Shown here in pieces: positions 1 to 48,901 of a stretch of 64,000 nt of DNA (its first letter is position 1; each line of letters begins with the position of its first letter). The stretch is from NCBI RefSeq assembly GCF_036588685.1, contig NC_086384.1:17050001-17114000 (forward strand), in the 5' to 3' direction. The position numbers and the translations under genes were made by a program. This DNA is from Mytilus trossulus (Eukaryota). The notes beneath the pieces were generated by a model. The model was given only the letters and a program-made list of their open reading frames with translations, did not search any database and was not told where the DNA came from.

Positions 1-620
1 TGATTTGTTGAATTCTGTCTGGTCAAATAAACATAAAATATATATTATGCAGGCATGTACTTTATTTCCCTTTAAATCTATTGACCGGAATTTATGTAAT
101 ACATTTTTGATATTCCGAAACAGGAATGTAATAATCATACCGATGAATTTTCTATGAGTCTCTTTAAATATAATCGATTTCAGATAAAAATACGTGAAAT
201 AAAGCCCTTTCGACGTCATAATGTAACAAAGTAAAAATAAAAATTGAAAGAATTTGACAGACGAAAAAATGTCGATTGAATATCGTATTGTTTGTATTAG
301 ACGTATTCGATGGATGATACTACACACATATAATACAATGATACAGGTAATTTGAGGAGAAAGGCTATTGATAATGTAGGTCTTGTGTCAACAATTAACG
401 TTGAATATATCATACATGTACATATAAAGAGCATTAGGGTGATTTTATATAATAGTAATAAAGGTAATTCAAATATGTTTAACGAGGTGATAATTCGGTC
501 GACTCACTTATAAAAGAAGACAAGCCGATGTACTTAATATAAAGATTGTCAATGAAAGCATGAGTTCGAACATCAATCAACTCTGTTGATAAAACATGCA
601 CTACTTATAAATTCATTTTA

Positions 621-971
621 GATTTTAACGAGAGAAATTGATGCATTACTGAAAAATTATTACACCAGGGTTTTCGATATCACAAACTAGTCAAAACATT
701 TACTAAATTTTATCATCGGTACAAAGACATCATTCGTAAATTTAGCTCAACATGCAGACTTCTTATACGTTCAGGTATTTCACATCCATTTTTTTATGGA
801 AATATTCTTTATAAAGCACAAAGGTGTCAGTATTCACCTCAGAAACTTACAAAACCTTTGAATAGACTTATTAAGAAGGGATATAATTACGAAACTGTTG
901 TCAAGTCATTAAAGATTGCATATTTTGGCGTTAATATTGAGTCACTGATAAGGTCTTTGCGTCGGAACTAA
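621..971 (+). pseudogene. C-terminal fragment of a PLE reverse transcriptase ORF (one in-frame TGA at 639-641)
   Basis: 116 codons in one frame ending TAA at 969-971; contains a KLLHQGFRYHKL motif typical of invertebrate PLE RT C-termini. Confidence 0.7.
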
Positions 972-1020
972 ACACATTTATTCTAAAACAGTTGTTGGCA
1001 TGACACGGGTTATGTTCTTC

Positions 1021-1087
1021 TCATATATGTTATGATGGTATGATACTAAACCCCTAACGGGAAGGATTGTGTCTGATGTTCATATGA
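1021..1087 (+). promoter_or_regulatory. Type II SECIS element in the retroelement 3' UTR
   Basis: Helix I UCAUAU/AUAUGA; core AUGAU (1032)...UGAU (1074); 11-position helix II GGUAUGAUACU/AGGAUUGUGUC with one mismatch; AAA bulge; mini-stem CCC-CUAAC-GGG. Starts 50 nt after the ORF stop. Confidence 0.8.
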
Positions 1088-1282
1088 TGAAATCATAATC
1101 TTTCAGTCAGTTTAATTGAAGTCTGGAGCTGGCATGTCAGTTAACTGCGAGTAGTCTGTTGTTATTTATGTATTATTGTCATTTTGTTTATTTTCTTTGG
1201 TTACATCTTCTGACATCAGAATCGGACTTCTCTTGAACTGAATTTTAATGTACGTATTGTTATGCGTTTACTTTTCTACATT

Positions 1283-1373
1283 GGTTAGAGGTATAGGGGG
1301 AGGGTTGAGATCTCACAAACATGTTTAACCCAGCCGCATTTTTGCGCCTGTCCCAAGTCAGGAGCCTCTGGCC
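1283..1373 (+). ncRNA. P5-type twister-like ribozyme (P2 has one mismatch)
   Basis: GGUUAGAGGU/GCCUCUGGCC closing stem; GGGG-GAGGG ... UAA-CCCA-GC-P3(CGCA UUUU UGCG)-CCUG-UCCCAAGU-CAGG; predicted cut U1326/A1327. Confidence 0.65.
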
Positions 1374-1572
1374 TTTGTTAGTCTTGTATTATTTTAATTT
1401 TAGTTTCTTGTGTACAATTTGGAAATTCGTATGGCGTTCAATAACTCTGAACTAGTATATATTTGTTTAGGGGCCAGCTGAAGGACGTCTCCGGGTGCGG
1501 GAATTTCTCGCTACATTGAAGACCTGTTGGTGACCTTCTGCTGTTGTTTTTTTATTTGGTCGGGTTGTTGTC

Positions 1573-1700
1573 TCTTTGACACATTCCCAATTTTCTTTCT
1601 CAATTTTATTAGTTAATTTTGTTGTATGCTTTTATCTTTGACACATTCCCAATTTTCTTTCTCAATTTTATTAGTTAATTCTGTTGTATGCTTTTATCTT
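1573..1700. repeat. 62-bp tandem duplication spanning the 3' junction of the PLE copy
   Basis: tctttgacacattcccaattttctttctcaattttattagttaatt(t/c)tgttgtatgctttta occurs at 1573 and 1635. Confidence 0.85.
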
Positions 1701-2594
1701 CTATCAGTATTGTTGCATAAACCGTTAGATAGATATATGAAAATGTAGTATGAGTCCCCATGAGACAACCCTCAATAGGGAATCCTAATCATGTTTTGTT
1801 CCCTTTTATCCCTGCTCCAGTAAATTATTTTGCTGCTGGTAGTTGGATTTTTTAGTGTTTTTTTTTAATTTTACGCTACATGGTTTTAAAATGTCAAAAA
1901 AGATTTCAGCACACGTGTCGACTTACAAACCTCCCCACATAAAGGTTTCACGAGTACCATTTAATATATATATGGATTGAATCAATAAATATAGCAATGC
2001 TTTAATGAAGTAGTTGTTGATTAAATCTGTTTTTTCAACAATTGAAATAATAAGATCGCAAAGAGACTTGTTTGCTATGTATAGTCAGTTTAACACCAGT
2101 GTAAAATTGCGCTATTTATATCATTTTTATAGATAATAATAATTTACACCATTTTAAAAGCAAAAGAAGGGAGGAGTGATTCTTTTTTGGTTCTATATTT
2201 ATATATAACCATTTTTAAAGTTATTTGTACAACTGAAATCAAATATCTTTATAAAACCGACATATTATATCAATATACGTGGCATTATATGTAAATGCTT
2301 ATCCTGTATTTATTAAGATCAATTCTTTAATCTTAAGTTCCTGAAAGAACCCCTCATCGCAAGTACTGATAACTGTTATTTTTTTAATACCATGGTGTAA
2401 GTAAGATATGTGTCATCGGTGGTATATATAATACCACACACCAATTAGTATGACCTCGAAATAGACTTCTTACATGTACCACTCGTTCCTTTGGACGATG
2501 ACGTTTGATGTTGTCACTATTCATGGAAATCCCTTTTATGACTTTAGTATGGATATCTGTATAATGCTTATATTAGGACTTGTTTTATTCATTA

Positions 2595-2646
2595 ATTTTT
2601 AGGTTTAGCAAATGTTTAACAACAATGACCTCTAACTGTACAGAGT
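2595..2646 (+). pseudogene. Degenerate partial duplicate of the acceptor and start of the first visible scramblase exon
   Basis: tttttag/gtttagcaaatgtttaacaacaatgacctctaactgtacagagt versus real exon ttttaag/gtttagcaaatgttcaacagcaatgggctccagctgtacagagt; contains in-frame stops. Confidence 0.75.
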
Positions 2647-2724
2647 TACGTTTGTTGATTACTTTATAAATTTGGTTTGGATTTCTTTATTTTTAGTTTC
2701 TTTTTTTATACATTTATTTTTAAG

Positions 2725-2850
2725 GTTTAGCAAATGTTCAACAGCAATGGGCTCCAGCTGTACAGAGTATGCCCGGGTGTCCCCCAGGTTTAGAATACCT
2801 CACAACATTAGATCAAGTGTTAATCAAACAACAAATTGAACTTTTAGAAG
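2725..2850 (+). CDS. PLSCR: Scramblase coding exon A
   Basis: taag/ ... GAAG/gtaaat; CPPGLEYL motif. Confidence 0.9.
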
Positions 2851-5800
2851 GTAAATTTATTTCGTTCGTGACTATCAGAGTTTTAATATATATATTTAAA
2901 TATGTAAAGTATGAGAAGTCCTTTGCCAGAAATAAACATGATGTCACTTGTAATGTAAAATGATATTCAATATTTTTTTCATTTAAATACACTATCATAA
3001 TGGAAAGGGATCAAGAAAAAAGTCTTACTCAATAAAGAAATCGACCGTAGATCTCTTTAGACTATTGATTCTGTTAATGCTAAAGTTTAGAGTTTCTTCC
3101 AGTGATAGAAAAATAAGAATGTTTGAATTGTAAGAATGTTATTGCCAATAAGATAAATGTTCACCTGAGATCAAACGACGATTACAGCTATAGGTTATCG
3201 TACGGTTTTTAACAATGATCAAAAATCCATATCGCATAGCTATGCACAAAAAGACCCAAAATGATAATGTATAACACTACAAACTTGAAAACTAACAGTC
3301 TGCTTTGAGTACTAACAGTGAACGAAAACAAATATGATAAACAACAACAAATGACAGCTTCTGAAATGCATGCTCCTGACTAGGGACAGGCACATGTATA
3401 ATATGGGCGGGTTTAACATGCTTGTTAGCTTCCACTAGACATTGAAAAGTGTTGCAGGAAAATAACACAAGAACAGACTGTACATTGACCTATAATGGTT
3501 TACCTTTTTAAATTGTTATTTGGATGTAGAGTTGTCTCACACCACATCTTCCTATATCTATGTAAACGACAATAAACCAAAGTGAAATATGATAAGCAGT
3601 ATGTTCAGTTATTTTCGTTTTTATTGCAGCATTTACAGGCTGGGAACAAAACAACAAATACAAAGTAATGAACAATCAAGGACAACAAGTTTATTTTGCA
3701 GCAGAAGGTATTCTATAAAATGTTTTAGATATTGCGTTTGGTATTGTATTGCAAACTAAAGATTGTGCATACAATATGCAATGAAAAAAACAGTCTGTGC
3801 TACAATATACAAAGGTTTAATTATATCCCAGAAAATTTAAAGACGTTATTAAAACAACTTTTAATCTGGTAAGGCTTACACATTTTCTGTAATGCCACAA
3901 AAGACAGTGTGGTATATCGAATGATTATGTTTTTTTTTGCCAATAGTATAATTACATGTAGGTACTGTCAACTTGTCTTAAAATTCTTAAGATAAGTGTA
4001 TAATTAACCATTTTGAATGGTAAGAGTGTTATATATCTTTCATTAAGGAAAATGTCTTTACAGACCTGTTGACATGGTTCGATATTTTATATAAAAAAAA
4101 CTATATATATATATATATATATGCAGGCGATTTGGTGTCACGATATCACAGTAGCATGGGTTCGAATCCCGGCGAGGGAAGAACCAAAAATTTGCCAAAG
4201 CAAATTTACAGATCTAACATTGTTAGGTTGATGTTTAGACGAGTTGTATATACAGTATGTACACAGCTATGTATCACCATCATTGATGGCGATCCGATGG
4301 ATACATCTGTTGTAGAGTTGTCACTGACTCCGACGTACTTACAAATATAATTATTTTTTTCTGTGACTGTATCTTACATTAATTTGTAGGATCCTTTACT
4401 ATAGATAATATAGCTGATCTGTAACAATAACATCTTCATGCCTCATATATCATGTACTGTAGTACGCCGCTAGATTAAAACTGACGTGGAAAGGTAACAC
4501 ACGGCCAGCGAAAGCTCTATTATTGTAGAGCCCAGGTGGTCATGTGGTCTAGCGGGACTGCTGCAGTGCAGGCGATTTGGTGTCACGATATCACAGTAAC
4601 ATGGGTTCGAATCCCGGCGAGGGAAGAACCAAAAATTTGCGAAAGCAAATTTACAGATCTAACATTGTTGGGTTGATGTTTAGACGAGTTGAATATATAT
4701 ATATATATAACAAAATAATAACGCAGATTTCAAGAAATCAGCACTTATTTCAAAATATCCTGAATCAGTAATTTAACTGATTCGATACATTAAGTAATTT
4801 GTTAGGTACAATACAATGATTTTCCCTTTTTCCTAACATTAGTTTTGACTTGTAAATTTGTTTATAGAATTTAACTTGGATAAAGATATGTCTCATTGAC
4901 ACTCTTCCTTGTCTTCATATTAATATCAACGTTAACGTTTGAATTATATATTGTATATGTGTGTCTTTTATCTTTAAATGTTTACACAACTAAACAAACA
5001 AACAAATCGTCTTTAAACAAATTTCAATTAATTACCGTCATTAAAACGTTTACAGAATGGACATATGAATTGGTCAAAATTTTACTAAATTTGATCACAC
5101 ATATATAGATTTATCGTGGACTTATGATTTCTATATAGAAATGTAATTCAAAAGGGGGAGGATTACGGTCTTTTGTTTATGCAGCTGGTTAATTTAGGAA
5201 TTACCCTACACATATGTCTACTCGTTGTAACGGAGTTATTAATAAATAGTTATAATACTGTTGATAAATCTGTTTGTCCCATAATTTTTAGGATGAATAT
5301 CAATTTGCCTTTTTATAGTTTGAAGCAATACTAAAATTTTCATTGTTTTGTCTTCAAAATAGGATCAATGACAGAAGTGAATATTCCAAATTTTCTATTG
5401 TTATCTTTCCATTTCTTAGTAGTAACATGCACTATGGTGTATTGTTTTGTTCTTGCCTATCCCAATTAATACCACAAGTTCGTGTTCACATTATATATTT
5501 CAATGAGGACATGTTTTTAGTCAACGCTTTTGCTTTGTTTTGTTATTTTAACTTTTTAACTATTTAAATATCAAATGACAAAACTACTGTTAATATAAGC
5601 GCAAATGGTTGCATTTACTATTCAATTTCATCCAAAACCGAAGTGTATTGAGGAATGCAAATTACTTTACGCTTCATAAATTCTCAGTTCTATATTGAAG
5701 CAGCCCCAGAATTATAAACTTGAACTTAATAATAAACAACACAGTTTAAATCTTCATTCGTGTTCTTTGTATTTATTGTTTTGTTTGAACACAATGGCAT

Positions 5801-8800
5801 GTTTTCAAAATATGTAAAAGAAATTATATCTTTTAAATATAAAGGATCAAATCAAATTTGAGAAACAATAACTTAGTATTTTATGATATAACGACTTATA
5901 ATTATTGACGTTAATTTATAATTTATAAGCTTATCCACGTTGAAACCAACTTTTCCATTTTGCACATGTCAGCTTTAAGACGTTTTATTAGTTTCACGTG
6001 GCTTTATATCGCCTTGATCCCTCTAGAGAATGTTTGCCAAAGTTGTTAAAAGTTTGACTTTCAGATTAAAATGTCATTAAAATCGTATAGACTATATTTT
6101 AAAGGTTAATATAATTGTTGCATGCTCTATTCTAAAAGGCAAAATGAAAGTAGTCTAAAATCACATTTAACGTTTCATGCAAAATATGAAAGCCACTTGT
6201 CTTCATTGCACTTTAAATTAGCCGAAAAGATAAACAGCATTCTCTTTTAAAATAAAAAAACGAAGAATACTAGTAGAACTAAATAAATTTAAAATTGCAA
6301 AAGTCTTATAGGATTTATAATACCTTTCATATTTTAAGTTTACTTTAATGTTGTATATAAAGAATTGAATCACTCTATTTTCCTCACTTATATATAGCTG
6401 TGAAAATTGGGGTTTCTTTGCAAAATTGTAACTATCAAGACCATTAAATGATTATTTATAATTCTAGAAAAATACTGTTTAATATCTATTTGATGTTTCT
6501 CATTTCATACCAAAGATCAGCCCTGATTTTTAGTGGGAGTTCATGTTTTCTATGTAATTCATACTGTTGTGTGTCGTTTGGTCGTTTGTTAATTTTTTAC
6601 GGCTATTTTCTACTTTTCTAATGTCCTATCGGTATCTGTTGCCTCTTTTCAAAACACATTCCGTTTCAGTTTTGCATAAATGAAATTAATGTCCACACAT
6701 TATAGTTATCTTGTCTATGTTTTCAGATACAGACATGTGCATGAGACAGTGTTGTGGGCCTCAAAGAAGTTTTGTGATACACATAACAGACAACATGAAC
6801 CAGGCAAGTATCAATCTCTGGCGCAGAATTCATATCCGTTCCATAAAATTGAGAATGGAAATGGGGAATGTGTCAAAGAGACAACAACCCAACCAAATAA
6901 AAAAATCAACAGCAGAAGGTCACCAACAGGTCTTCAATGTGGCGAGAAATTCCCGCACCCGGAGGCGTCCTTCAGCTGGCCCCTAAACAAATATATACTA
7001 GTTCAGTGATAATGAACGCCATACTAATTTCCAAACTGTACACACGAAACTAAAATTAAAATAATACAAGACTAACAAAGACCAGAGGCTCCTGACTTGG
7101 GACAGGCGTAACAATGCGGCGGGGGTAAACATACCTGCTTCCCAATACTGCACTTAATATGACGTCATTGTGTGTGTAGTGTTACAAAGTATTGAACGGA
7201 ACGTATATGATTTCTCTGCTCAGGAGATTTGAATTACATACCAAGAGCATAACAATGTAGAAGTTTGTTTTCATGTAAAACATCTGAAAGCTTTGTGTGT
7301 ACTATTAATGCAATCTTATTATTTTTATTTTTAATTTTGACGTCACGTGTCCGCAATGGTTGACCACAAAGGACTACTGGGTTTGTTATGTAACATCAAA
7401 AGGTTGAGTTTGTCAAAATCTCTTGACAAGTATCCCAAAATCTTAGGTCGAGTGTTTTTTTTTATTTAAAGGTCGTGATCTTAAAGCTTTGACTTTAGAT
7501 TACTATTTATTGATAATAAACTTGAAATCTTTGTAACTATACTCACTTATAGGGTCTTTGCATCGGAACTAAACACATTTATTCAAAAACCAGTTGTTGG
7601 CATGACACGGGTTAATTTCTTCTCATATATGTTATGATGATATGATAATAAACCCCTAACGGGAAGGATTGTGCCTGATATTCATATGATGAAATCATAA
7701 TCCTTCAATTAGTTTAATTGAAATCTGGAGTTGGCATGTCAGTTAACTGCGAGTAGTCTGTTGTTATTTATGTATAATTGTCATTTTGTTTATTTTCTTT
7801 GGTTACATCTTCTGACATCAGACTCGAATTGATATTTAAATGAACGTATTTTTATGCGTTTACTTTTCTACATTGGCTAGAGATATAGGGGGAGGGTTGA
7901 GATCTCATCAACATGTTTAACCCCGCCGCATTTTTGCGCCTGTCCCAAGTCAGGAGCCTCTGGTCATTGTTAGTCTTGTGTTATTTTAATTTTAGTTTCT
8001 TGTGTACAATTTGGAAATTAGTATGGCGTTCATTATCACTGAACTAGTATGATTTGTTAAGGGGCCAGCTGAGGGATGCCTCCAGGTGAGGGAATTTATC
8101 GTTACATTGCAGACCTGTTGGTGACCTTCTGCTGTTGTTTTTTTCTATGGTCAGGTTGTTGTCTCGTTGATACATTCCCCATTTCTTTTCTCAATTTTAT
8201 CAATTCAATTAAAAGTCAAGTATAACATTCAAATGAAATGAGAAATAAAAAAAACAGGCCTCATGTTTTATGGTTTTTGACTCTTTACCATTTGTTTTTG
8301 ACAGGAAGTAATTCGTCTGTCTAGGGACTTTAAGTGTTGTGCCGGATGTTGTTGGTGTGCAAACGCTGATGGATGCGCACATGAGGTTGTGATCGAAGCT
8401 CCTGTTGGACAGGTAGTTGGATACGCAAGACAAGAGTAAGTATAATACTTCAAAAACAGATACGAAATCTCTACATATTATGGAAACATTCTTTAAACTG
8501 ATATGATTCTAAACGATGTTTAACAGAACATTTTTATAAATAAACTCATCATAGATACCAGGACTAAATTTTATATATACGCCAGACAGGCGTTTCGTCT
8601 ACAAACGACTCATCAGTGACGCTCGAATCCAAAAAAGTTTTAAAAAAGCAAAATAAAGTACGAAGTTAAAGAGCATTGAGATCAAATTTCTTAAAAGTGT
8701 TGCCAAATACAGCTAAGGTAATCTATGCCTGAGATAGAAAAGCCTTAGTATTTAAAAAAAAAAAAAAAAAACAATATTGATAAATCTTTAATCAAAATCT

Positions 8801-14950: not shown

Positions 14951-16462
14951 TTATATAAGGAGATATTTATTTATTTTGAATTATATCTTTAACTGAGTAG
15001 TTCAATTTCAAAACTTAAAAAAGATATTGTATATAATCAATATACTTCTTAGAAAAAAACAATTGTCTAATTTTTTGATTTTCAAAAAATGTAATGAAAT
15101 GGAATTGGCATGAAGGAACTTTAATGTAAAAGTACGAGGACTATTTGAATCATTATCTTGTCTCTAATTGTAACAAAACTAATAATTCATATAAGTAAAT
15201 AATTCATTTCATTAAAAATGTATGTAACTGCAATTGGACATGTAACGAATAATGACCATAAAATAGAATAGTAGTCACAGCTTCGTACATAACTTAGTAA
15301 GCAATATACAAAGATTCTTTCATACTATATAATACATCACTCTTAAACAAATATAATTATTCGAAACAAGTTGTCAAAATCAATTAGAAATATAGCATGT
15401 CCTTAAAACCTACTACCATGAAAAGTGTGTGACTAAAACGGATTACGGAGATTATTAACTATTTATTAAACTAATTCTATTTTCCCTTTGGAATATGCTA
15501 GTTCAATATGGAAATCGATTATAAACAGCAGGAGTAATGATAAGTACCTGAGAGAAATATAATCAAACAAACATATTTAACAACAAAGACGTATTTTCAA
15601 TACACACTCAACGTCGGGACAAAACAGTCTCACGAAATGCTTTATAGAAAGACAAGTTTATATGGTCCAATGTGACATGTACATTACGTAATCCAGTTGT
15701 TCATTTTTTTTTTATTAAATTGTTAAATAAGTATGTAGATTTAGCATTCTAGTCTGTGTAGTCTGTGTAAATTTTGTAGGAGTTATTTTGTATTAATGAG
15801 GAACAAAACCTGGAAATAAACATGTATCACAATTTTTCTTTGTGTATTGTTGAATTGTGCGCCTTCTATCTGTGATAAATTTATATAATCTTTGCATGTT
15901 TGTTTTCTAAATAAATATGTTCCTTTTTACGCTTTATTTATTTGTGCTATTTCTCCAAAATACTCATACCGTGCTACTTTGGTCTAGGTACCTGAGTATA
16001 CAGACAAAGTAAACCACCTCTCTTATTTGATCGCCGTCCATTATGTTCGGTCCTATTATCTAAAAATGCAATTAAAAGTCGACTGTATAATGCGAATGTC
16101 CTGTAATTTAACGTTTAACTTGTAAGGAGCCCCGAAATAAACCGGGAACCGATCCTTAGTTACGTATAACACAGACACTTCATAACAGTCAACCAAACAA
16201 TAAAACGGTCAGATAAACTTCAGAACGGATGGCTTCAATTCTAATTTTAGAAACTTACCCTGTAAGCAACAACTCTCTATCAAATAATTTTAAAAGAAAA
16301 CAAAATCCCCTGATTATCTCATCATCTTGGAGATATTTCTTCAGTACAGACGCTGCTGAATATTCTCCGAGAGGTATATATCATTATAAATGGTATTTGA
16401 ATAACGCTACACAGAGATGGAATTTTAATAATTTATGTTGTCAATTTGGGCACATGAGTTCA

Positions 16463-16758
16463 CCTCAGTTTTTGGTAGGGTTTATGCTCCTCAGTTTTTG
16501 GTAGGGTTTATACTCCTCAGTTTTTGGTAGGGTTTATACTCCTCAGTTTTTGGTAGGGTTTATGCTCCTCAGTTTTTGGTAGGGTTTATACTCCTCAGTT
16601 TTTGGTAGGGTTTATGCTCCTCAGTTTTTGGTAGGGTTTATACTCCTCAGTTTTTGGTAGGGTTTATACTCCTCAGTTTTTGGTAGGGTTTATGCTCCTC
16701 AGTTTTTGGTAGGATTTATGCTCCTCAGTTTTTGGTAGGGTTTATACTCCTCAGTTTT
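16463..16758. repeat. 26-bp minisatellite, about 11.4 copies
   Basis: Unit cctcagtttttggtagggtttat(a/g)ct. Confidence 0.95.
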
Positions 16759-16826
16759 ATGGTTTCTGTATAGTGTTACTGTCATTTCCTGACACGTCCT
16801 TGATTCTACATGCCTTATGGTAGTTC

Positions 16827-18375: not shown

Positions 18376-18570
18376 AAAGTTAGAGGTTTAGCGCTAAAGA
18401 ACCAGGTTCAATCCACCACTTTACATTTTAAATGCCGGTACCAAGTCAGAAATAAAACAGTTGTTGTCCATTACATTCGTTTGATGTGTTTTGTTATTTG
18501 ATTTTTCCATGTGATTAGGGACTTTCCGATTGAATTTTTCTCGAAGTTCAGTATTTTTTGTGATTTTTTT
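18376..18570 (+). repeat. Repeat family with degenerate twister-like motif (same family as 30005-30430 -, 26585-26718 -, 20815-20920 +)
   Basis: GAGGU-UUAGCGCUA-AACCAGGUU-CAAUCCAC...CCGGUACCAAGUCAGA followed by the shared tail ttcagtatttt(t)gtgatttt. Confidence 0.6.
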
Positions 18571-23766: not shown

Positions 23767-25455
23767 TTACTGAACATCGTATAAGAATACCTGACCATTA
23801 CTTCTACAAACTAACAATTGATTAAATTTATCACTGAACTGAACGCAATACGGACGATTGAGTCCACTGCTTGTGTCTAAGATACGTTTACTTTGTTGGC
23901 CGTCTGATGATATCAAGGTGATACCACCAGCATAATCAGCAACAAACACTACATCGTTTAATCCACATGTAATACCATATACTTTCGTTAGTAAATCATT
24001 TGTTACTGTCCACTGAGTGTTCCCTTGTCTATCACAACATACTACACGTTTTTCCCGTTCGATTGGATAATAAATCTGACCAAAACTTCCAACGCACAAA
24101 TGTGCTGTTGAAGTGCTTCTGAATTCGATGTCTGAGATAAATAATCCCGATACTGATAAAATTCTGATACTTATAGTTCCATTACGTATGAACAGTTTGT
24201 CGTCTTTGTATGCTATGCCATATACCTTCTCCTGAGACTCGTATATTGTGTCTAATTGCTCGTTTTCAGTATTAAAGGTACAAACTAACTTTTCTTCAAC
24301 TAACGAAATTGCAATCATATCATTATCCATATAGGTAATATCGAAAGGTGTCCATGGCAGTTTAAATTTTTTAATACGCTTCCCACTTTTATTATACATC
24401 AGAATTGTTTTGTTTGACTGATTTACCAACAATACGTCCCCACCAGGTAAAATCTCACACCCGGTCAACTTGCAATGCTCACTCTGAACTTTAAACGAAG
24501 TATTTTTCTTTAAGGTAATTGAGTGTATATCTGTAACATATTCTCTTCTTTTGCCAGGTAATATGATTTGAGCTTGTTTTTCTGTAGCAACATCTGTACA
24601 CACGGGACTGTCAAAAGTTTTGATGGAAATATCACCCCAAATTTTCACGTCTTTTGGCATCGATTTTAGACCATTTGATACTTTAAATTGTACATCAAAT
24701 GTTTTCATTTCAGGTTTAGTTTTAAGGTCTTTGATATATGAAAGTTCCCTTTCGACATCCTTTTCGATCTCATGAAGAGCTAAAAATATTTGTAAATCTG
24801 TGGCATGAATTTTCATCTGAATAATGTTTTCAATTGCTTTTTCAACGTTTTTAACTTTACTATCTATTATAGAAATAAAACCTTGAACTGTTGTCTTCAC
24901 CTCAAGCTGCTTCTCTTTTAAGTTCTTGGTCATTTCTAATTCCAAGGAGTCCAGATGAGAATTGATCTGTATCCTTAGATCTGCTATTGCTTTCAGGTAG
25001 GTTGTAGTTTTCTCGTCAATATGCTTTAAGTTACTTCTTTTTTCGTACCTTATCTTTTGAAAAATGGTTTGAATTTCAGACAAATTTTGCTCGATATTTG
25101 TTACAGATGACGATGTTTTTATATTTTGTACAACATCTCGAAGAGAATCGATCTCACATTTTTTATGATCTTGTTTTACACATTTGACACAGCATAGAGA
25201 AACATGGTTGGTGCAATAAAATTCATATTTCTCTTCGTGTATACTGCAGCGGTGTTTGATTTCTAGTGCATATTGCGGAAGCTTTTGGTAGTCTCTAATC
25301 GCTATTGTTTTATGATTCTTTGTTGATTTCCTACGGCTGTGAAGATCATCGCATTCGATACAAATAGCTTCTTCACATTCGGAACACCATGATGCTGCTG
25401 ATTTAGAGATATTCTGGAGTTGACAGACATCACATGAGGGTTCTGCTGTCGCCAT
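23767..25455 (-). CDS. RING-less TRIM-like protein 1 (B-box1, B-box2, coiled coil, NHL-like beta-propeller), 562 aa, single coding exon
   Basis: CDVC..C-SEC-EEAIC-IEC-DDLH..H; C-SIH..C..H..CC-VKC..H..C; heptad-rich middle; propeller repeats (PFDI, VYGI, PYCV). Splice acceptor caacag/GCCAGATG immediately upstream of Met. Confidence 0.93.
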   Translation of the reverse strand: MATAEPSCDVCQLQNISKSAASWCSECEEAICIECDDLHSRRKSTKNHKTIAIRDYQKLPQYALEIKHRCSIHEEKYEFYCTNHVSLCCVKCVKQDHKKCEIDSLRDVVQNIKTSSSVTNIEQNLSEIQTIFQKIRYEKRSNLKHIDEKTTTYLKAIADLRIQINSHLDSLELEMTKNLKEKQLEVKTTVQGFISIIDSKVKNVEKAIENIIQMKIHATDLQIFLALHEIEKDVERELSYIKDLKTKPEMKTFDVQFKVSNGLKSMPKDVKIWGDISIKTFDSPVCTDVATEKQAQIILPGKRREYVTDIHSITLKKNTSFKVQSEHCKLTGCEILPGGDVLLVNQSNKTILMYNKSGKRIKKFKLPWTPFDITYMDNDMIAISLVEEKLVCTFNTENEQLDTIYESQEKVYGIAYKDDKLFIRNGTISIRILSVSGLFISDIEFRSTSTAHLCVGSFGQIYYPIEREKRVVCCDRQGNTQWTVTNDLLTKVYGITCGLNDVVFVADYAGGITLISSDGQQSKRILDTSSGLNRPYCVQFSDKFNQLLVCRSNGQVFLYDVQ

Positions 25456-28400
25456 CTGGCCTGTTGAAACGGATATTAAAAAAAATATAGAAAAAGAAAA
25501 CATTTTCATAAGAACAATTTTCAAAAAAACACAATGGAATTCTAACTTTGTAATGCATAAACTGTAGGCAAGCGCCTAAATATTTTATTGCGCTGTAAAC
25601 ATATATGACTATGTATAAAAAAGAAGATGTGGTGTGATTGCCGATGAGACACATCTCCATAAGGGACCAAATGAAACAGAAATTAACAACTATAGTTCAC
25701 TGTTCGTCCGTAAATACTGAGCAAAGCCCAAATTGCATTTTTAGTAAGTTATTAAAGGCCCTAAAATGACAATCTAAAAACAATTCAAACGAAAAAACTA
25801 ACGACATTATTTAATGCCAAAAAATTGAACGAAAATCAACGATGTAACACTTTTAAACAAACATCAGCAACCGAATTACAGGTTCCTGACTTGGAACATG
25901 CATGTTGGTAAACTGTCTGTTTCAGTATGTAGACAGGACTAACATGTTAGTAAGAGAAAAAATAACGCTGTATAAATATTGTGCACCTAAGGTCTTTCAT
26001 TGAAAGGATACTAAACAGTGATGGCGCTAAGACTACCACTTTGTTTTCAGTAAAAAAAAAACAATTATTGTCTGTTTTTAATTAAAGTATTGATTACGAT
26101 AAAATTAAGAAAAACTATCAATAACTATAATATAGGCGCAGGAAACACGTAATGTTCGTACAAAAATACTTTAGAATTTGTTTTAATTTACTTATATATG
26201 GACAGTTTTTCTGCTGGTAATATTTAGTCCATAATGTTAAAATCGACACATATCTTCTTCGTTTTTGACGTACTTGATTGATCTACTTTAGGGGGAGGAA
26301 GTAAATTATTGATACCAGTTTATATTCTTAATCGTTGTTCTTTATTCAGTGTCTATGTACTAACTTTTGTTAATGAATGGATACCTGAAGCATGTGTGCA
26401 ATAGTGGCCTTGAAATTCCACTGCCATGATCGTCTGAATTTGAAACATTTCTTTACTAAATCCTTGGTATAATAATTAATAAAACAAAATTCTAGATATA
26501 GGTTTAAGTTTAGTTGCTCGCAGTAACTTTTTTTCTTTTCTAGTAACACAGATAGTAAGATTGTCATATCAAGGAGCGTATAGAACAGTAAAAAGTAAAT
26601 CACAAAAATACTGAACTGAGAAAATCAATTCGGAAAGTCCATAATAACATGGCAAAATCAAATATCAAAACGCATAAAAAACGAATGGACAAGAACTGTC
26701 ATATTCCTGACTTGGTTTTAAAACTATAACTGAAATTACAATAAAAACCCTTTCAAAGTTCGAATTTAAAATATGACAGATCACAATTTCGGTTTGGATT
26801 CAAGCCCACATTACGTTCAAGTTTATCAATTATTATTACAAATCAATAAAAAGTCTTTGTTATCAGTTTATGTAATGTGCGAATCCTGAAATGCCATTTT
26901 CACTGTATCCGTGATGAATTACTCATGTAGAATGATAAATAGATATAAGACAAATTCACGATTTTTTAATAAAATAAGAAATAATAAACAATATGTACTG
27001 GTTTCATAAATTCATGATAAATGTATTTGATGCGGACCCTAAAGCTATCCAGGTATAAAATTGATACACTGATAGATAAGTATTAAGAATAGTTATCGAA
27101 CAGAGTGTACAAGAGTTTTAAAAGTAGCAGTCAAGTTTCGTTTGTAGAAAAATGTACCTTTTAACATGATTAATAATGTAGTATAACTTAAAACAGGCTT
27201 TGTTGTTCAGCTTGTTGATATTCCAATTTGTTGTTCTTTTAATGCAATTCATGTTTACTGTTGAATAACGATATCAAAATTTCATTTTCACTACAGAGCA
27301 ATTCATTACTGTTGTATATGCGATGCATTTTCACAAACGGATTTTAATACATTCTCATCATCTAAAGTCGTAATTTAGCCGACTTTCTAACAGAATTTAT
27401 GAAGTCAGAAGGATTGATTATATATGCATACTTTGTGAGTAAAAGTCTGAAGTAATATATCAATAAATACCGTAAAAATGGCATTTATTGCTCATTGTTG
27501 AAGACCGTACGGTTACCTATAGTTGTTAATAGCTGTGTCATTTACATTGAGCCAAAGTCACTTGTATTTTTTTCCATGCAAAATAACCTGTAAATTTTTC
27601 AAGGGAAATTAACTTGTAATTTTTACCAGGGCCAATCAAAAACAATCCTTTTTTACGCAGTGATCCGAACCTGCTAAGAGGGTTAGGGTCCTCCCCCCGG
27701 CCCCTAGGACATTTTTGAAAATGATTCTTAACTTATTTTCTACAATAACAAGTGGTTTACGATTTCGGTCTAAATATACAGAACATACTTAAGACTTGCT
27801 TGCTTGGTTTGTATTCATGTTTGCCTAGGAATTGTAATTGAGATAGAGCACACATTTATACTAAAAAAGCAAAAAAAGACATCCAAACCGTTTATTACAA
27901 GCATTATGAAAATAGCGCTTATAGATGCATCTATGAAAATCAAACTTAAGAGAAGTCGCATAAAGATCTTCATTTCACGACTGATGAGTGGTAACGTTGT
28001 CGTCTAGCACAAACAATTGCTATACATTTGACGTCTGGATGGCGGTATAATTATTTTTTTTAATTTCAATTTTATGTACATCTTATACAGTAAAGAAAGT
28101 TCGAGCAACAATCGATTCACCTTGATATATGTTTGAATTTCTCATAACTATGTTCTAAATGTTTTACTTAAGAACGGTACAGAACTATTGCAAAAAAAAA
28201 ATAAAAAATAAAATTAAGTACAGAAAAAATATTTAAGAACAGAACACAATATCCGAATTCTACCATAAGTTGGTTATACCCGTGTATATTCAAGTAATCA
28301 TCTACAACCAGCTTGCTTTTTTAAATAACATCAGTATTAAAGTAATTTTTTAAGACTATTTTCAGTTGTTGCATGTCGAATTATCATATCAAATGATAAT

Positions 28401-29859: not shown

Positions 29860-32150
29860 CCTTATCGTCCAATGAAAAGTCAGTTTTTTGCCCTCTAACT
29901 TTCATAGTACATGATTTTCCGTGCACTATGAAATACTATACATGAATGACTTTTCATTGTCAGTTAATTACGAAAGTAAACTCTTTTAAAATAGCTGCAC
30001 TAACGAAAAAAGTAAAAACACAAAAATACGGAACTCCGAGGAAAATTCAAAAAGGAAAATCCAAAATCAAAAGGCAAAATCAAAAGTCCAAACACATCAA
30101 ACGAATGGATAACAACTGTCAAATTCCTGACTTGGTACAGGCATTTTCTAATGTAGAAAATGGTGGATTAAAACTGGTTTTATAGCTAGCTAAACCTCTC
30201 ACTTGTATGACAGTCGCATCAAATTCCATTACATTGTCAACGATGTATGAACAAATAAACATACTCAAAGAGTAAAAATGTCAAAAATAGGGGTACAGCA
30301 GTCAGTATTGTGTTATCATCTTAATATCACTATAAAAACAACAAATGTAACAAAGAAGCACAAAAAGGCATACATCAAATTTAACATACTCATTTTGCTT
30401 TTCTTATACGACTTAATTTATCTAGGTAAAGTCTACTCGTAAAGGATAGAAGGTTTTCATTACTGATGTAAAATTGCGCGTTTGAAATTCGCACAGGTAG
30501 ACAGAAGTGTACGATCCCGTAAGACATTTTCCTTGGGAAAACAGCCTACTGATTAATGATGAAAGAGCAAAGATTAAAATAAAAATATTTTGAATTTTGT
30601 AAAATTTCATGCATTTGCTAATGGCACACATATATAGAATAAACAAAACAAAAAACAACAATACCATACTGCTGATATATAAAGCAAATGATTGTTTTTG
30701 AAGAAACACAATACATTTAAATTTATCAATAACAAGTAAGCATTTAATGTTGAATAATCTGATTTCAAATATTCATACAGAGAGTTTTATATTTATAAAA
30801 AAAATAAGATTTTAAACAGGAAATTTATATAACATCGTGTTGCTATTTAAAATTTATAAAAAACTAAAGGTTTATAAGTATTAAATTGTACCTGAAGCAG
30901 AAGAAAAACAATTTATCCATCACAAACTATGTCAGTGCTATTTGATTTCATCCATTGAAATGATCATTACCTATGTTTTATATTTTAGTTCATTATAAAA
31001 AGTAAACTCTTATTTAGGTTTAAATATTACAACGGCAAAAAACTGACTTTACATTGGACGAGACGGGGTGATTATGTTCTTAAATTTAGTTCCTTATAAA
31101 AAGTGAACTCTTATTTAGGTTTGAATATTACAACTGGAAAGGATAGTTTTGTAAGGTCACTCGAAAGTGTGAATATGTTCTAAATTGGTATTGTCTAACT
31201 ATGAATACACTATCCGATTTAGCACATATTTACAACTTGAGTAATCCTGTAATTAGTCTATTGATATGTTATGGATGACTAGCTGTAGCTCATTTACGTA
31301 GTTTTGTAAATCTACTCACTGTTATCGTTGTAAGATATTGACTCCAGAATGAAAACATTGTAGTTGCTGGTGTAAGTATGTTTATTGGTATATTTGTATA
31401 AAACTGTGTTTTACTATACATGATATTTTTTTAAACCTATAGATAGTTTGCAGTGGCAGATCCCGAAAGAGGTGGTGGAAAACGCTTATTTTTTGGGATG
31501 TTCAATGCTTTGAATAAGAACATACAGTTGAACCCCTCCCCCTTAATTTTGGTCGGAACCCCTTTAAAAATTAAAAACGGATCTGCCTCTTTTATGCACC
31601 GAAAGGTAGTCTAGTGAATAGTTTACATGCATGACATATCTGTCACTTGACATTAAGCATCCAATAACCAATCAATTCATGACGAAATAGATCAAATTGC
31701 TTTTATTTCCCTGTACAAGGTTTCATGGTTCACTCTATTTTTGGGTACAAAGTCATTACACGGAAGATAATATAAATGATTACAGTTTTAGATGGCATTG
31801 TCCTAAAATCAAGTCATAAAGAACTACATGTGTTACTCTTTATTTAATTGAAACACAATAATATTTTATTTGTCAAAAATATTTTTGATCCAAAGATGAA
31901 ATAGATGGATGTTTAAAAATTTATTTGAAAACTAGTTTATACAAACTATTTAGTTTAATTTGGAATACAACATTTTTTTTAAATAGTCAGTAGCAATTTG
32001 TATTTCAATATCTTCAAGATAAGATAATCTTGATTACGATACAATGAAAACTTATCCTTGTTGTCATTCATGCGTAGTTACTTAGTACACGAAAAGTATG
32101 TACTATGAAAGTTAGAAGGCAAATTCAACCAATTTGATTGAACGAAAAGT
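29860..32150. mobile_element. Non-autonomous DNA transposon-like segment bounded by ~90 bp inverted repeats
   Basis: 29860-29950 (tgccctctaactttcatagtacat...catgaatgac) is the reverse complement of 32063-32150. Confidence 0.55.
30113..30216 (-). ncRNA. Twister-like ribozyme, second repeat family
   Basis: Reverse complement ACUGUCA/UGACAGU closing stem; GUGA-GAGGU; UAA-UCC-AC-CAUUUUCUA CAU UAGAAAAUG-CCUG-UACCAAGU-CAGG. Confidence 0.65.
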
Positions 32151-37269: not shown

Positions 37270-37760
37270 TACAGCACATAACTGTGCATTTGTATTCAGA
37301 TATCGCAGATCAAATTTATTCGTTCATTGTGTAATCATACGTTTTTTGATTGAGTTAAGTCTGCCAATTGATATTTTATCGTATGTTTTTATATGTTGTG
37401 ATGTTATGCTACTGTTTCAGAAAAAGGGAGAAGGTTTGGATCCATTAAAACGTTTAATCCCGCTGCAAATGTTTGCACCTGTCCTAAGTCAGGAATCTGA
37501 TATACAGTAGTTGTCGTTTGTTTATGTAATATATACGTGTTTCTCGTTTCTCGTTTTGTTTATATAGATTAGACCGTTGGTTTTCCCGTTTGAATGGTTT
37601 TACCCTAGTAATTTTGGGGCCCTTTATAGCTTGTTGCTCGGTGTGAGCCAAGGCTCCGTGTTGAAGGCCGTACTTTAACCTATAATGTTTTACTTTTTAA
37701 ATTGTTATTTGGATGGAGAGTTGTCTCATTGGCACTCACACCACATCTTCCTATATCTAT
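37270..37760 (+). mobile_element. Interspersed repeat (third PLE-like 3'-end family)
   Basis: Its terminus matches 3485-3562; carries a twister-like motif. Confidence 0.6.
37417..37500 (+). ncRNA. Twister-like ribozyme, third repeat family
   Basis: UCAGA/UCUGA; GGGA-GAAGG; UGGAUCCA; AAACGUUU; AA-UCCC-GC-UGCAAAUGUUUGCA-CCUG-UCCUAAGU-CAGG; predicted cut U37455/A37456. Confidence 0.72.
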
Positions 37761-47033: not shown

Positions 47034-48901
47034 CTTGCCTTTTAAAAGGTAAACAGCAATGTGTATCAAGAAAGTGTCAAAAGAAAACTATTTTATAGAT
47101 AAAGCATTCTGATTTGCAGGTCCATTGAAAACAGAGGCCAAATATAACGACAACGAAAAGACAAAAAATAATAACAAAATATTAGCTTAGCTATTAGTAT
47201 TGCCTTAACTGTATTTGGCAAAACTTTTAGAAATTGTGGTCCTCAATGCTCTTCAAGTTCATACTTTTTTTACCCTTTAGACGCGCGTCTGGCGTATATA
47301 CAAAATTAAGTCCTGGTTTCTATGATGAGTTTATTTACATAGAAAATTATAAAAGATTGAACAACACAAAACACCAAACAGGATGCCCATCGGGGTTTTC
47401 TCTTTTCAGGCGTTTAAGTCTGATAGAAATATTGACATGATGATAAAGATAATGATTGATCCAGTCACAATAAAGATAAACATACGTCTTTTTACATGTG
47501 ATGTACGATCTCGTTTTATTCTTTGCTTCTTTGCATAAATTGTCTCAGTTACTTATTTCAATGACGAAAAGCCTTTATGAACAAGGTTTATAATTTCTTT
47601 AGAAGAATTTCAAACTGGGATTTACAAATAAAAATAATTTTCCAAATGTGTCATTGATAACAAATAATTTTGTTAAATTCACATTCATCTACGGCCACTA
47701 AAAACTTTCGGTTTTATTTTTCTTATTTCAACCAAAATATGGGTTCAAACTTTTTACTTCCTCAAGGCAGCTTGTTTTGGTTTTCATTTAATTGTTTAAT
47801 GGAGTATTCTCTTTCTTTCTTACTTGTTCAAAAATGATACACTGTTTTAAAGTTAAAAATAGAGGCTAATGATTTGAAAATCAACTTACAACGCATGTAA
47901 AATAAATGACAAAGAAAAATATAGAAAACATAACATAGAAAAACTTAGGCCTGAACAAAACGACCTCCGACAGTAGCTTCGGCAGAGAAAGCAGATCCAG
48001 CCCCGTACTCTGCACCCGCCTCATGTTCCTAGTACAAACTAAGGTTATTTTTTAAGCATGTGTCTGTGTTAACTTACGTAATTCTTCTACTCTTATCATA
48101 GTTTAAGTCTCACTCTTTACGATACATGTATCACAAACAAAAATCATAAATATTATGATGTGTCAAAAAAATATCAACGAAAGAGATACTTAATACGCAA
48201 TAGAAAATGATTAACGAGCAATTTAAAATTAAATGCCGAGAGTTGACAAATATGTGTATTGCATGAGATACGTTGGAGGAATCTGTTTCTCTAATGATAT
48301 TTAGACGATATACAGGCAATCCTATTTCATTTGTTTTGATTGAATACATAACGATGTTTTTTTTCAAGTGACGTCATCGGGTATTATCATCTTTTTCATG
48401 ACACTACCGTATTATACTCAGAAGAAAGCAAGAAAAACATATTTACGTCGTTTTACGTCATAATCGAATGTTGACCAACAAAGAACTGAGATCAAACGAA
48501 CCACACATTGAATTAATAAAAATATTCAGCAGGGTCAGGAAAGCGTTAAATCGCTTAAGAATAAGAGAAATCACAATATTCAACATTTTACTGTTAAAAT
48601 GACCAAAATAATATATTTATACAAATTAAAATCAGATGTTTTCAAAATGGCATTTACCATGTATATTAAATACATGTATACATATGGAACAAGCAGGAAC
48701 ATGTATAGTACTCCGTTTACTATATATATATACATATATATAAGTATCTGGGACAAGGTCATATGTAATAAATTGATGAAAACAGACGCTTGCGTATTTA
48801 CAGACTATAATTCTCGCTTGTTATTATAAAATTCTTCGTTTCATTATCAAAAAAAGGATTGCAATACCATGTAAACAAATGTTTGTGTGAAAAGTTCTTA
48901 C

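What the first reader, a model, noticed from the sequence alone, without database searches (positions are those of the whole stretch)
7875..7965. Permuted twister-like ribozyme lacking P1, conserved by covariation across three repeat families
Seen in sequence: copies at 1283-1373, 7875-7965, 37417-37500, 30113-30216 (-) and degenerate 18376-18463 share one order of elements. The order is closing stem / P2 strand / GAxGx / two palindromes / UAA / P2 / 2 nt / P3 hairpin / CCUG-UxCxAAGU-CAGG / closing stem. Pairings covary: T1 pseudoknot GAGGG:CCC, GAAGG:CCU, GAGGU:ACC; P2 GGGG:CCCC versus GGGA:UCCC; T2 GC or AC with GU; P3 closing pair C-G versus U-A; and the P5 stems are unrelated in sequence but all complementary. 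Established: this matches the twister core (UAA, L4 UCCCAAG, GAGGG) opened at P5, and P1 is known to be dispensable for twister cleavage. Inference: this is a widespread bivalve retroelement twister variant. PLEs are classically associated with hammerheads, so a twister-bearing PLE terminus may be undescribed; I cannot check the literature.
Basis: partly seen in the sequence, partly recalled or inferred. Interest (0 to 1): 0.92.

Follow-up and report, generated by a model that had tools for sequence, protein, structure and literature searches.

The report
Twister-like RNA fold in Penelope-like retroelement tails
The stretch is a 91-base RNA module with nearly every hallmark of a rearranged "twister" self-cutting ribozyme. 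It sits in the tail of a dead copy of a very abundant Naiad-type Penelope-like retroelement, a group described as lacking the hammerhead ribozyme of its relatives. Cutting itself is not shown.

Summary
At 7875-7965, 1283-1373 and 37416-37501 the order P5 / A-rich joint / P2 strand / GA+T1 / palindromes / U-AA / P2 / GC / P3 / P4-L4 / P5 matches the twister core opened at P5.

- **Abundance:** the P4/L4 hairpin occurs 46,323 times in this 1.3 Gb genome, against 17 for a reversed control.
- **Covariation:** compensatory changes support P5, P3, one pair of P2 and two of the three T1 pairs.
- **Weak fit:** the ACC-type families (30114-30216, 18376-18463) keep T1, P3, P4 and P5 but not canonical P2 plus T2.
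- **P1:** no P1 can form. Its place holds a perfect palindrome that differs between families.
- **Carrier:** the carriers are 3' tails of Naiad-type Penelope-like elements. An RT reading-frame remnant lies at 615-971, and full-length homologues have an N-terminal GIY-YIG, a CxC motif and a DKA motif. Short non-autonomous derivatives also carry the module.
- **Against:** no Rfam model reaches its threshold. RNA reads show unbroken cover and no pile of ends at the predicted cut.

So the fold is well supported, but catalysis is unproven.

This scan reached the same reading earlier on other pieces of this genome (s1-820125, s1-820501). I re-tested both of their points myself. I found no paper linking twister to Penelope-like elements.

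The parts
7543..8200 (+). 5'-truncated dead copy (family A) of the 3' tail of a Naiad-type Penelope-like element. It holds the finding.
   Evidence: It is a direct repeat of 942-1619 at 87-93% identity. No RT match lies upstream of 7543. The 3' end is inferred by homology to copy 1, where reads run off into varied flanks at 1608-1611.
7875..7965 (+). Twister-like module, type-P5 order with both P3 and P5.
   Evidence: Read directly. The core matches the Rfam twister-P1 consensus lines printed.
7875..7883 (+). P5 5' strand. It pairs with 7957-7965. In this copy the innermost pair is an A-C mismatch.
   Evidence: four P5 pairs change on both sides between families.
7888..7896 (+). P2 3'-side strand GGGG (7888-7891), G7892-A7893 (position of the catalytic G of twisters) and T1 strand GGG (7894-7896).
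7898..7907 (+). Perfect palindrome UGAGAUCUCA at the place where P1 would start. G7896-U7898 can also pair with A7910-C7912 to close it as an 11-base loop.
   Evidence: the palindrome word differs between families but stays perfect.
7910..7917 (+). Second small palindrome AACAUGUU, directly 5' of the predicted cut.
7918..7920 (+). U-A-A. The predicted scissile bond lies between U7918 and A7919.
   Evidence: By position relative to P2 and the Rfam consensus. Cutting is not shown.
7921..7926 (+). P2 5'-side strand CCCC (7921-7924) and T2 strand GC (7925-7926).
7927..7938 (+). P3 hairpin, CGCA-UUUU-UGCG.
   Evidence: two P3 pairs change on both sides.
7939..7954 (+). P4 stem CCUG/CAGG with loop L4 UCCCAAGU. 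CCC pairs in T1 and GU pairs in T2.
   Evidence: The same P4/L4 occurs in type-P1 twister-like RNAs that score 45-55 bits.
7957..7965 (+). P5 3' strand.
615..971 (+). Remnant of the last 118 codons of the element's RT reading frame. It has one in-frame stop, and the natural stop is at 969-971.
   Evidence: tblastn gives 93% identity to the L011 reading frame.
972..1610 (+). 3' tail of copy 1 (family A).
   Evidence: RNA reads run off into varied flanks at 1608-1611.
1283..1373 (+). Module of copy 1. One P2 mismatch (CCCA).
6843..7132 (-). Inverted, 5'-truncated family A copy. It starts 5-6 bases before the U-AA equivalent, so it lacks the GAGGG strand.
37416..37501 (+). Family C module: GGGA:UCCC, AGG:CCU, palindrome UGGAUCCA.
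30114..30216 (-). Family D module in a short (~235 bp) non-autonomous element. T1 is GGU:ACC. P2 and T2 are not canonical.
18376..18463 (+). Degenerate family D copy. Its P4 is broken (CCGG..CAGA).
3375..3390 (-). P4/L4 hairpin of a decayed family-B-like copy, without a GAGGG strand.

Best explanation
The stretch is an RNA module of the twister ribozyme class in the type-P5 arrangement, with both optional stems P3 and P5. It is encoded in the 3' untranslated tail of a 5'-truncated, dead copy of a Naiad-type Penelope-like retroelement (N-terminal GIY-YIG endonuclease, C-terminal RT).

The module was kept by selection on the RNA while the carrier families diverged to 45-69% RT identity. P1, the helix next to the cut site, is replaced by a perfect palindrome that differs between families.

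Most likely working (inferred, not shown): the module is the Naiad counterpart of the hammerhead ribozyme that other Penelope-like elements carry in their terminal repeats. It would cut the element's transcript between U7918 and A7919, with G7892 and A7919 at the active site. Cutting would be weak or conditional, perhaps only when two modules pair through their palindromes, as proposed for the dimeric hammerheads of Penelope-like elements.

I rate the twister-type fold at about 0.85 and present-day self-cleavage at about 0.45.
For: Core match. Read in type-P1 order, family A has UAA, P2, GCC, P3, G, P4 with loop UCCCAAGU, an A-rich joint, P2' and GAGGG. These agree with nearly every upper-case position of the Rfam twister-P1 consensus lines printed. 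The one P4 difference is a compensated U-A pair.

Same hairpin in other twister-like RNAs. Type-P1 twister-like RNAs from metagenomes with the identical P4/L4 score 45-55 bits, E 1e-9 to 4e-7.

Pair counts.
- Families A, B and C: 90.5% of cells pair, against 30-47% when partners are slid. Eight pairs change on both sides, against 1-2 when slid.
- With D and E added: T1 pairs in 94.4% of cells, and two of its three pairs change on both sides.

Abundance: 46,323 hairpins against 17 for the control.

Carrier.
- RT frames on the same strand end about 380 (A), 417 (B) and 740 (C) bases before P4, including window 615-971.
- Full-length homologues of 915-1055 aa have an N-terminal GIY-YIG, one CxC about 128 aa before DKA, and YIDD.
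- These are the Naiad marks of PMC8557442, which also reports that Naiads lack canonical hammerheads and dominate bivalve genomes.

Palindromes.
- 36 of 42 full copies hold a perfect palindrome of 8 or more bases, against 22% of shuffles.
- Within family C the centre is AU, GC or UA, with one G-U intermediate.
- Hammerheads of Penelope-like elements have a palindromic helix III and are thought to act as dimers (PMC4209133).

P1 is reported as dispensable for twister cleavage (PMC11662667 citing Kosutic 2015).
Against: - No Rfam twister model reaches its gathering score. Locally there is only a partial 13.3-bit match, and the best Twister-P5 score genome-wide is 24.9 against 37.6.
- RNA raw reads (run X24) cover the predicted site of copy 1 (U1326/A1327) without a break. 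No place shows many molecules beginning or ending, and no joint suggests circles.
- The reads come from thousands of copies and both orientations, so weak or conditional cutting is not excluded.
- The ACC-type families D and E, the most numerous, cannot form canonical P2 and T2 together. A subgroup of D also breaks one T1 pair.
- The minimum-energy fold of family A prefers GGGUU with AACCC, which would hide the cut site.
- 5' truncation points of genomic copies scatter and do not pile up at the predicted cut (small sample).
- Six RT-like ends in the sample have no module within 1.3-1.4 kb downstream.
- The structure was derived from these same sequences, which inflates the slid-partner contrast.
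Confidence: 0.55

Rival explanations
1. The module descends from a twister, or has converged on its fold, but no longer cuts. It would serve the retroelement as a structured RNA signal, for example for RNA pairing or dimerisation through the palindrome, or for recognition of the tail by the element's RT during target-primed reverse transcription.
For: - Cover is unbroken and no ends pile up at the predicted site in RNA reads.
- The most numerous families (D, E) keep P3, P4/L4, P5, T1 and the palindrome but not canonical P2 plus T2. This suggests the constraint is on shape and on the hairpin, not on the active site.
- The P4/L4 hairpin and everything downstream are kept in nearly all 5'-truncated copies.
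- Perfect palindromes point to RNA-RNA pairing.
Against: - Bases needed for catalysis rather than for folding stay fixed in all families: the G-A before T1 and the A-A after the cut site.
- Twisters tolerate many imperfections in P1 and P2 (PMC11662667).
- Hammerheads of Penelope-like elements also cut poorly in vitro and are still regarded as ribozymes.
Confidence: 0.3
2. The module has no present function. The likeness between families only reflects recent common descent of their tails, and the apparent covariation comes from a handful of lineage-specific changes.
For: - Only about five family-level lineages were sampled, so each compensatory change counts once or twice.
- P4 never varies, because it was the search pattern.
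Against: - The flanks and the stems P3 and P5 are unrelated in sequence between families, while pairing is kept.
- The RT proteins of the carriers are only 45-69% identical.
- Two separate double changes fall within the 3-pair T1.
- Palindromes differ in sequence but all stay perfect.
Confidence: 0.1
3. The module is the conserved central domain of a tRNA-derived SINE superfamily (Core, V, Deu or Meta), not part of a Penelope-like element.
For: - Family D is a short (~235 bp) non-autonomous element with a fixed 5' end.
- Many copies are 5'-truncated, as SINE and LINE copies are.
Against: - ARAGORN finds no tRNA-like sequence anywhere in the window.
- In families A, B and C the module follows an RT reading frame of the Penelope-like type on the same strand.
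- The SINE papers I read give no such domain, though their sequences are in figures that I could not read.
Confidence: 0.05

Closest known systems
Type-P5 twister ribozyme (Roth et al. 2014; Rfam RF02684, clan CL00120)
   Same: - The order of strands is the same when opened at P5.
- It has the U-AA site, P2, the GC of T2, and P4 with loop U-NNN-AAG-Y.
- It has an A-rich joint and a G-A followed by three bases that pair with L4.
   Different: - No P1 hairpin. A palindrome-bearing insert of about 21 bases takes its place.
- P3 and P5 are both present.
- It scores far below the family's gathering score.
- It is eukaryotic and repeat-borne, in tens of thousands of copies.
- Cleavage is not shown.
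Hammerhead ribozymes in the terminal repeats of Penelope-like elements (Cervera and de la Pena 2014, PMC4209133)
   Same: - A small self-cleaving-ribozyme motif carried in the non-coding repeat or tail of Penelope-like elements.
- It is massively copied.
- The helix next to the cut site is reduced to a palindrome, taken to mean action as a dimer.
- Apparent activity is low.
   Different: - A different ribozyme class (twister, not hammerhead).
- A different clade: Naiads, reported to lack canonical hammerheads (PMC8557442).
[quoted passage not shown] 2021, PMC8501958)
   Same: Twister variants tied to a retrotransposon in an invertebrate. The proposed role is processing of the element's transcript.
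   Different: - Those are type-P1-like and sit at the 5' end of a LINE. Their P1 is partly formed by the target-site duplication, and they are shown to cut in vitro and in reporter constructs.
- Here the module lies inside the 3' tail of a Penelope-like element, is permuted, and is untested.
Mini-twister without P1 (Kosutic et al. 2015, as cited in PMC11662667)
   Same: The twister core works without P1, which is the state seen here.
   Different: That is an engineered construct. Here the loss of P1 is natural and comes with a conserved palindromic insert.

Membership tests
Twister ribozyme (Rfam clan CL00120) | Conserved core bases: U-A-A at the cut, GCC after P2, L4 UCCCAAG, A-rich joint, GAGGG | tested here: met
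   I compared families A, B and C directly with the Rfam twister-P1 consensus lines. Differences: the joint is UAUA instead of UAAA, L4 ends in U, and P4 has a compensated U-A pair. Families C, D and E change the T1 bases together with L4.
Twister ribozyme (Rfam clan CL00120) | Helices P2 and P4 flanking the core | tested here: inconclusive
   P4 is always present but never varies, because it was the search pattern. P2 pairs in A, B and C, with one double change. In D and E only CAC:GUG can form, shifted by one base.
Twister ribozyme (Rfam clan CL00120) | Pseudoknot T1 between L4 and the GGG after G-A | tested here: met
   T1 pairs in 94.4% of cells, and two of its three pairs change on both sides across A, C, D and E.
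Twister ribozyme (Rfam clan CL00120) | Pseudoknot T2 between the end of L4 and the two bases after P2 | tested here: inconclusive
   GC with GU can pair in A, B and C, with no double change. In D and E only one pair is left if P2 forms.
Twister ribozyme (Rfam clan CL00120) | P1 helix next to the cut site | tested here: not met
   The bases after GAGGG (UUGAG) and those before UAA (AUGUU) are not complementary in any family. P1 is reported as dispensable.
Twister ribozyme (Rfam clan CL00120) | Score at or above the gathering score of an Rfam twister model | tested here: not met
   There are no matches in the window. The local match is a partial 13.3 bits to twister-P1. The best Twister-P5 score genome-wide is 24.9 against 37.6, at other loci. 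The models expect P1, and the P5 model has no P3.
Twister ribozyme (Rfam clan CL00120) | Site-specific self-cleavage giving 5'-OH and 2',3'-cyclic phosphate ends | tested here: inconclusive
   Ordinary RNA-seq reads show no break in cover and no pile of ends at U1326/A1327. That rules out efficient bulk cutting only. A bench test is needed.
Naiad clade of Penelope-like elements (Craig et al. 2021, PMC8557442) | N-terminal GIY-YIG endonuclease joined to a C-terminal RT | tested here: met
   Seven of nine full-length homologues of the upstream RT frame have a GIY-YIG match at residues ~50-200, and the query matches their C-terminal 300 residues. This was shown on homologues (37-46% identity). 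I could not fetch a full-length copy from this genome.
Naiad clade of Penelope-like elements (Craig et al. 2021, PMC8557442) | CxC motif in the linker, and the DKG motif changed to DKA | tested here: met
   All 11 full-length homologues have one CxC about 128 residues before a DKA.
Naiad clade of Penelope-like elements (Craig et al. 2021, PMC8557442) | No canonical hammerhead ribozyme | tested here: met
   No hammerhead family reaches its gathering score in the 64 kb window.
Naiad clade of Penelope-like elements (Craig et al. 2021, PMC8557442) | Partial tandem copies (pseudo-LTRs) and adjacent inverted 5'-truncated copies | tested here: inconclusive
   An inverted truncated copy (6843-7132) lies 410 bases from the 5' end of the finding's copy. 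No full element with pseudo-LTRs is in the window.
tRNA-derived SINE with a conserved central domain | tRNA-like head | tested here: not met
   ARAGORN finds no tRNA-like sequence in the window.

The most novel reading that the evidence does not exclude
Naiad-type Penelope-like elements did not lose their ribozyme. They swapped the hammerhead for a twister whose cut-site helix is a palindrome, so that it cuts only when two copies pair, either in tandem transcripts or as RNA dimers. If so, a self-cleaving ribozyme would be a general requirement of endonuclease-bearing Penelope-like elements. The twister would then be one of the most abundant ribozyme genes in bivalve genomes.
Probability: 0.3. 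Interest if true: 0.85.

Novelty: new variant of a known kind. Interest (0 to 1): 0.7.

Why it matters
Penelope-like elements are known for hammerhead ribozymes in their terminal repeats. The Naiad clade, which dominates bivalve genomes, was reported to lack them, and this was taken to show that the ribozyme is not needed for spread (PMC8557442).

A twister-type module kept by compensatory change in Naiad tails reopens that question and makes it testable at the bench. If it cuts:
- it would link a second ribozyme class to Penelope-like elements;
- it would give a natural twister without P1;
- through its family-specific perfect palindromes, it would parallel the dimer-dependent hammerheads.

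It also shows that standard Rfam models miss this variant.

Tried and rejected
- **Rfam.** I scanned the whole window at gathering scores and found nothing. A local scan at E up to 10 gave only a partial twister-P1 match. Twister-P5 over the whole genome gave its best hits at other loci, all below threshold.
- **Known SINE domain.** Text searches of three SINE papers found no match, and there is no tRNA head. I rejected this reading for families A-C and left it weakly open for D and E.
- **PLE reading frame between the two family A copies (1600-7500).** There is none. They are separate truncated insertions.
- **Circular RNA or a cut-defined 5' end.** Reads show no such joints. The truncation points of about 20 copies scatter.
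- **First palindrome test.** A fixed segment (-72 to -40) missed the palindromes of families A and C. I redid it with a wider segment.
- **Metagenome scan for the hairpin.** Most of the 120 hits are chance or ordinary type-P1 twister-like RNAs. Only two contigs of one record set (L084, L087) hold decayed copies of this module, so it gave no independent cross-species test. I did not analyse locus L112, whose record name mentions a human gut metagenome.
- **Steps that could not be run.** One script that located modules by typed fragments was not run, and I used numeric offsets instead. The supplements of PMC11662667 are not held.
- **Consensus sequences.** The majority lines printed by the alignment tools, and one script, served only to find repeat boundaries.
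Full report
**What is there**

The sequence at 7875-7965 reads, 5' to 3':
- a 9-base strand, GGCUAGAGA
- UAUA
- GGGG
- G-A
- GGG
- UU
- the palindrome GAGAUCUC, flanked by U and A
- AUC
- AACAUGUU
- U-A-A
- CCCC
- GC
- the hairpin CGCA-UUUU-UGCG
- the hairpin CCUG-UCCCAAGU-CAGG
- AG
- CCUCUGGUC, which pairs back to the first strand

The window also holds partial copies at 6843-7132 (minus strand), 3375-3390 (minus strand) and 25885-25900 (minus strand).

The hairpin pattern CCTGTNNNAAGTCAGG is not a chance feature. With up to 2 mismatches the window has 8 matches against 0.00 expected. The 1.3 Gb genome has 46,323 exact matches against 17 for the reversed pattern. Of these, 15,757 have the loop variant ACC and 6,127 have CCT.

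**Likeness to twister**

Rfam gives no match at gathering scores. At E up to 10 there is only a 13.3-bit partial match of twister-P1 to P3 plus P4. Over the whole genome the Twister-P5 model scores at best 24.9 bits against a threshold of 37.6, and at other loci. By Rfam's standard the module is therefore not a member.

The models expect a P1 helix, and the P5 model has no P3. Clear type-P1 twister-like RNAs also fall below the twister-P1 threshold of 67.2 bits:
- one in this genome (L003) scores 55.5 bits;
- several in metagenome contigs, with exactly the same P4 and loop (CCUG-UCCCAAGU-CAGG), score 45-55 bits with E from 1e-9 to 4e-7.

I set the module beside the consensus lines printed in those calls. 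Family A agrees at UAA, the GCC after P2, the G before P4, UCCCAAG in the loop, the A-rich joint and GAGGG. The one change in P4 is a compensated U-A pair. P5 is inserted where twisters carry it, between P4 and the A-rich joint. This is the type-P5 order.

**Covariation**

I sampled 83 loci of 3 kb around hairpin matches and sorted the copies into families:
- Family A: the finding's family.
- Family B.
- Family C: the family of the copy at 37416.
- Families D and E: the ACC type, which includes the copy at 30114.
- Single variants.

On a MAFFT alignment of families A, B and C, the twister structure with both pseudoknots pairs 90.5% of cells. When the partners are slid by one to three columns, 30-47% pair. 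Eight pairs change on both sides, against one or two in the slid versions. These lie in P5 (four pairs), P3 (two), P2 (GGGG:CCCC to GGGA:UCCC) and T1 (GGG:CCC to AGG:CCU).

A second alignment adds D and E, and MAFFT on its own places GUGA-GA-GGU in the same register. There T1 pairs in 94.4% of cells, and two of its three pairs change on both sides (GGG:CCC, AGG:CCU, GGU:ACC).

Caveats:
- The structure was read from these same sequences.
- P4 was fixed by the search pattern.
- Only about five family-level lineages were sampled.

**Where the fit fails**

In families D and E the stretch between N-AA and P3 has five bases, not six (UCCAC or CCCAC). Either CAC pairs with GUG as a 3-pair P2 and T2 shrinks to one pair, or AC pairs with the loop's GU and P2 is lost. 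In the canonical register P2 pairs in 64.6% of cells and T2 in 70.8%.

Two family D copies also have GGG opposite ACC, which breaks one T1 pair. These families are the most numerous.

P1 cannot form in any family. The bases after GAGGG (UU...) and those before UAA (...GUU) are alike rather than complementary.

**The palindromes**

Directly after the T1 strand every family has a perfect palindrome with no spacer:

| Family | Palindrome |
|---|---|
| A | UGAGAUCUCA |
| B | GGGAUCCC |
| C | UGGAUCCA, UGGGCCCA or UGGUACCA, plus one GGGUCC intermediate |
| D | UAGCUAGCUA or UAGCGCUA |
| E | UGGCAUGCCA |

Of 42 full copies, 36 hold a perfect palindrome of 8 bases or more in that region, against 22% of shuffles.

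The central two bases stay self-complementary, so a simple hairpin does not explain the constraint. Pairing between two RNAs does. The flanking (G)GUU(U) and (A)AAC(C) can also close the palindrome into a 10-11-base loop. The 'second palindrome' is that AAC followed by a GUU before the cut site.

ViennaRNA predicts P5, P3 and P4 in all families, and predicts dimers 8-17 kcal/mol more stable than two monomers. For family A it prefers GGGUU with AACCC, which would hide the cut site.

The hammerheads of Penelope-like elements have a minimal, palindromic helix III next to their cut site. They are thought to work as dimers and have low activity in vitro (PMC4209133). The parallel is suggestive, but the dimer model for this module is my inference.

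**What carries it**

The window has no large reading frame near the finding. However, 615-971 encodes the last 118 residues of a reading frame, with one internal stop, that is 93% identical to an open 373-residue frame in locus L011. Its stop lies 311 bases before the start of the module at 1283.

Same-strand frames of this kind end the following distances before P4:

| Family | Distance to P4 | Identity to the family A protein |
|---|---|---|
| A | about 380 bases | reference |
| B | about 417 bases | 45% |
| C | about 740 bases | 65-69% |

One of these frames matches Pfam RVT_1.

A search of 1.84 billion proteins gave 24,094 relatives. Seven of nine full-length ones tested (915-996 residues) have a GIY-YIG match at residues 50-200, and the query matches their last 300 residues. 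All 11 full-length ones examined have a single CxC about 128 residues before a DKA, followed by YIDD. These are the marks of the Naiad clade. [quoted passage not shown]

The finding's own copy (7543 to about 8200) is cut off just before the stop codon. An inverted truncated copy lies 410 bases upstream of it.

Family D is a short element of about 235 bases with a fixed 5' end some 20 bases before the module. It is probably a non-autonomous derivative.

Six other RT-like ends in the sample have no module within 1.3-1.4 kb downstream. They may be broken copies, or they may be families without the module.

**Does it cut?**

I laid RNA reads on 985-1670 (copy 1) at 90% likeness.
- One run of raw RNA reads gave depths of about 420-700 over the module, in both orientations.
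- Cover across the predicted bond U1326/A1327 was unbroken.
- The tool listed no place where many molecules begin or end, and no joint suggesting circles.
- Reads run off into varied flanks at 1608-1611, which marks the element's 3' end.

Efficient cutting of the bulk RNA is thus excluded. The reads come from thousands of mostly dead, co-transcribed copies, so weak or conditional cutting is not excluded.

The 5' ends of about 20 truncated genomic copies scatter.

**Literature**

- Twister candidates have been predicted in bivalves (PMC11662667).
- Twister variants act at the 5' end of Perere-3 elements in Schistosoma (PMC8501958).
- P1 is reported as dispensable.
- Of 17 papers holding both 'Penelope-like' and 'twister', none (judged by title and abstract) describes a twister in a Penelope-like element.
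- A 2026 preprint on retrozymes and Penelope-like elements does not mention twister.

**Earlier notes of this scan**

Two follow-up notes on other pieces of this genome (s1-820125, s1-820501) gave the Naiad reading and reported no efficient cutting in reads. I used them as leads and re-tested both points here, with the same outcome.

**Verdict**

- The twister-type fold is well supported for families A, B and C, and only in part for D and E.
- The carrier is a Naiad-type Penelope-like element.
- Self-cleavage is plausible but unproven, and the one available test speaks against efficient cutting.

Noticed in passing
window 23767-25524 (-), 45336-47069 (-), 62296-63996 (-): Three paralogous reading frames of 566-585 aa, each with B-box zinc-finger matches (TRIM-like). 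They lie in a roughly 17-21.6 kb segmental repeat.
   Followed up: partly
loci L042-L056 (G000:C1:1156668-1158362) and L074-L077 (G000:C1:4461421-4461550): Tandem arrays with a 37-39-base period. They are built from the P4/L4 hairpin plus the bases after it, so a piece of the module has been amplified as a minisatellite.
   Followed up: partly
L003:1483-1542 (-): An ordinary type-P1 twister-like sequence elsewhere in this genome (55.5 bits on RF03160, E 1.4e-10, below the gathering score). Its genomic setting was not examined.
   Followed up: no
L002:1512-1596 (+): A weaker type-P1 twister-like sequence (30.5 bits). About 17 bases downstream lies the 3' part of a family C tail, starting at its P4 hairpin.
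   Followed up: no
window 1544-1605 and 1606-1667: The last 62 bases of the family A tail are duplicated in tandem at the end of copy 1 (81% identity). This may correspond to the terminal 'extension' described for Penelope-like insertions.
   Followed up: no
window 16385-16810: A 26-base tandem repeat array of about 16 units.
   Followed up: no
L196:2915-3040 (-) (metagenome contig): A twister-like sequence with a proper P1 hairpin, P3 and the same P4 stem. It can be read in either type-P1 or type-P5 order, because CGCAGA occurs on both sides (30.5 bits on RF03160).
   Followed up: partly
L084:4508-4524 (-) and L087:3426-3442 (+) (metagenome contigs JYMV01...): Decayed copies of this module in contigs of a metagenome record set. 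They are probably host DNA of a related animal.
   Followed up: no
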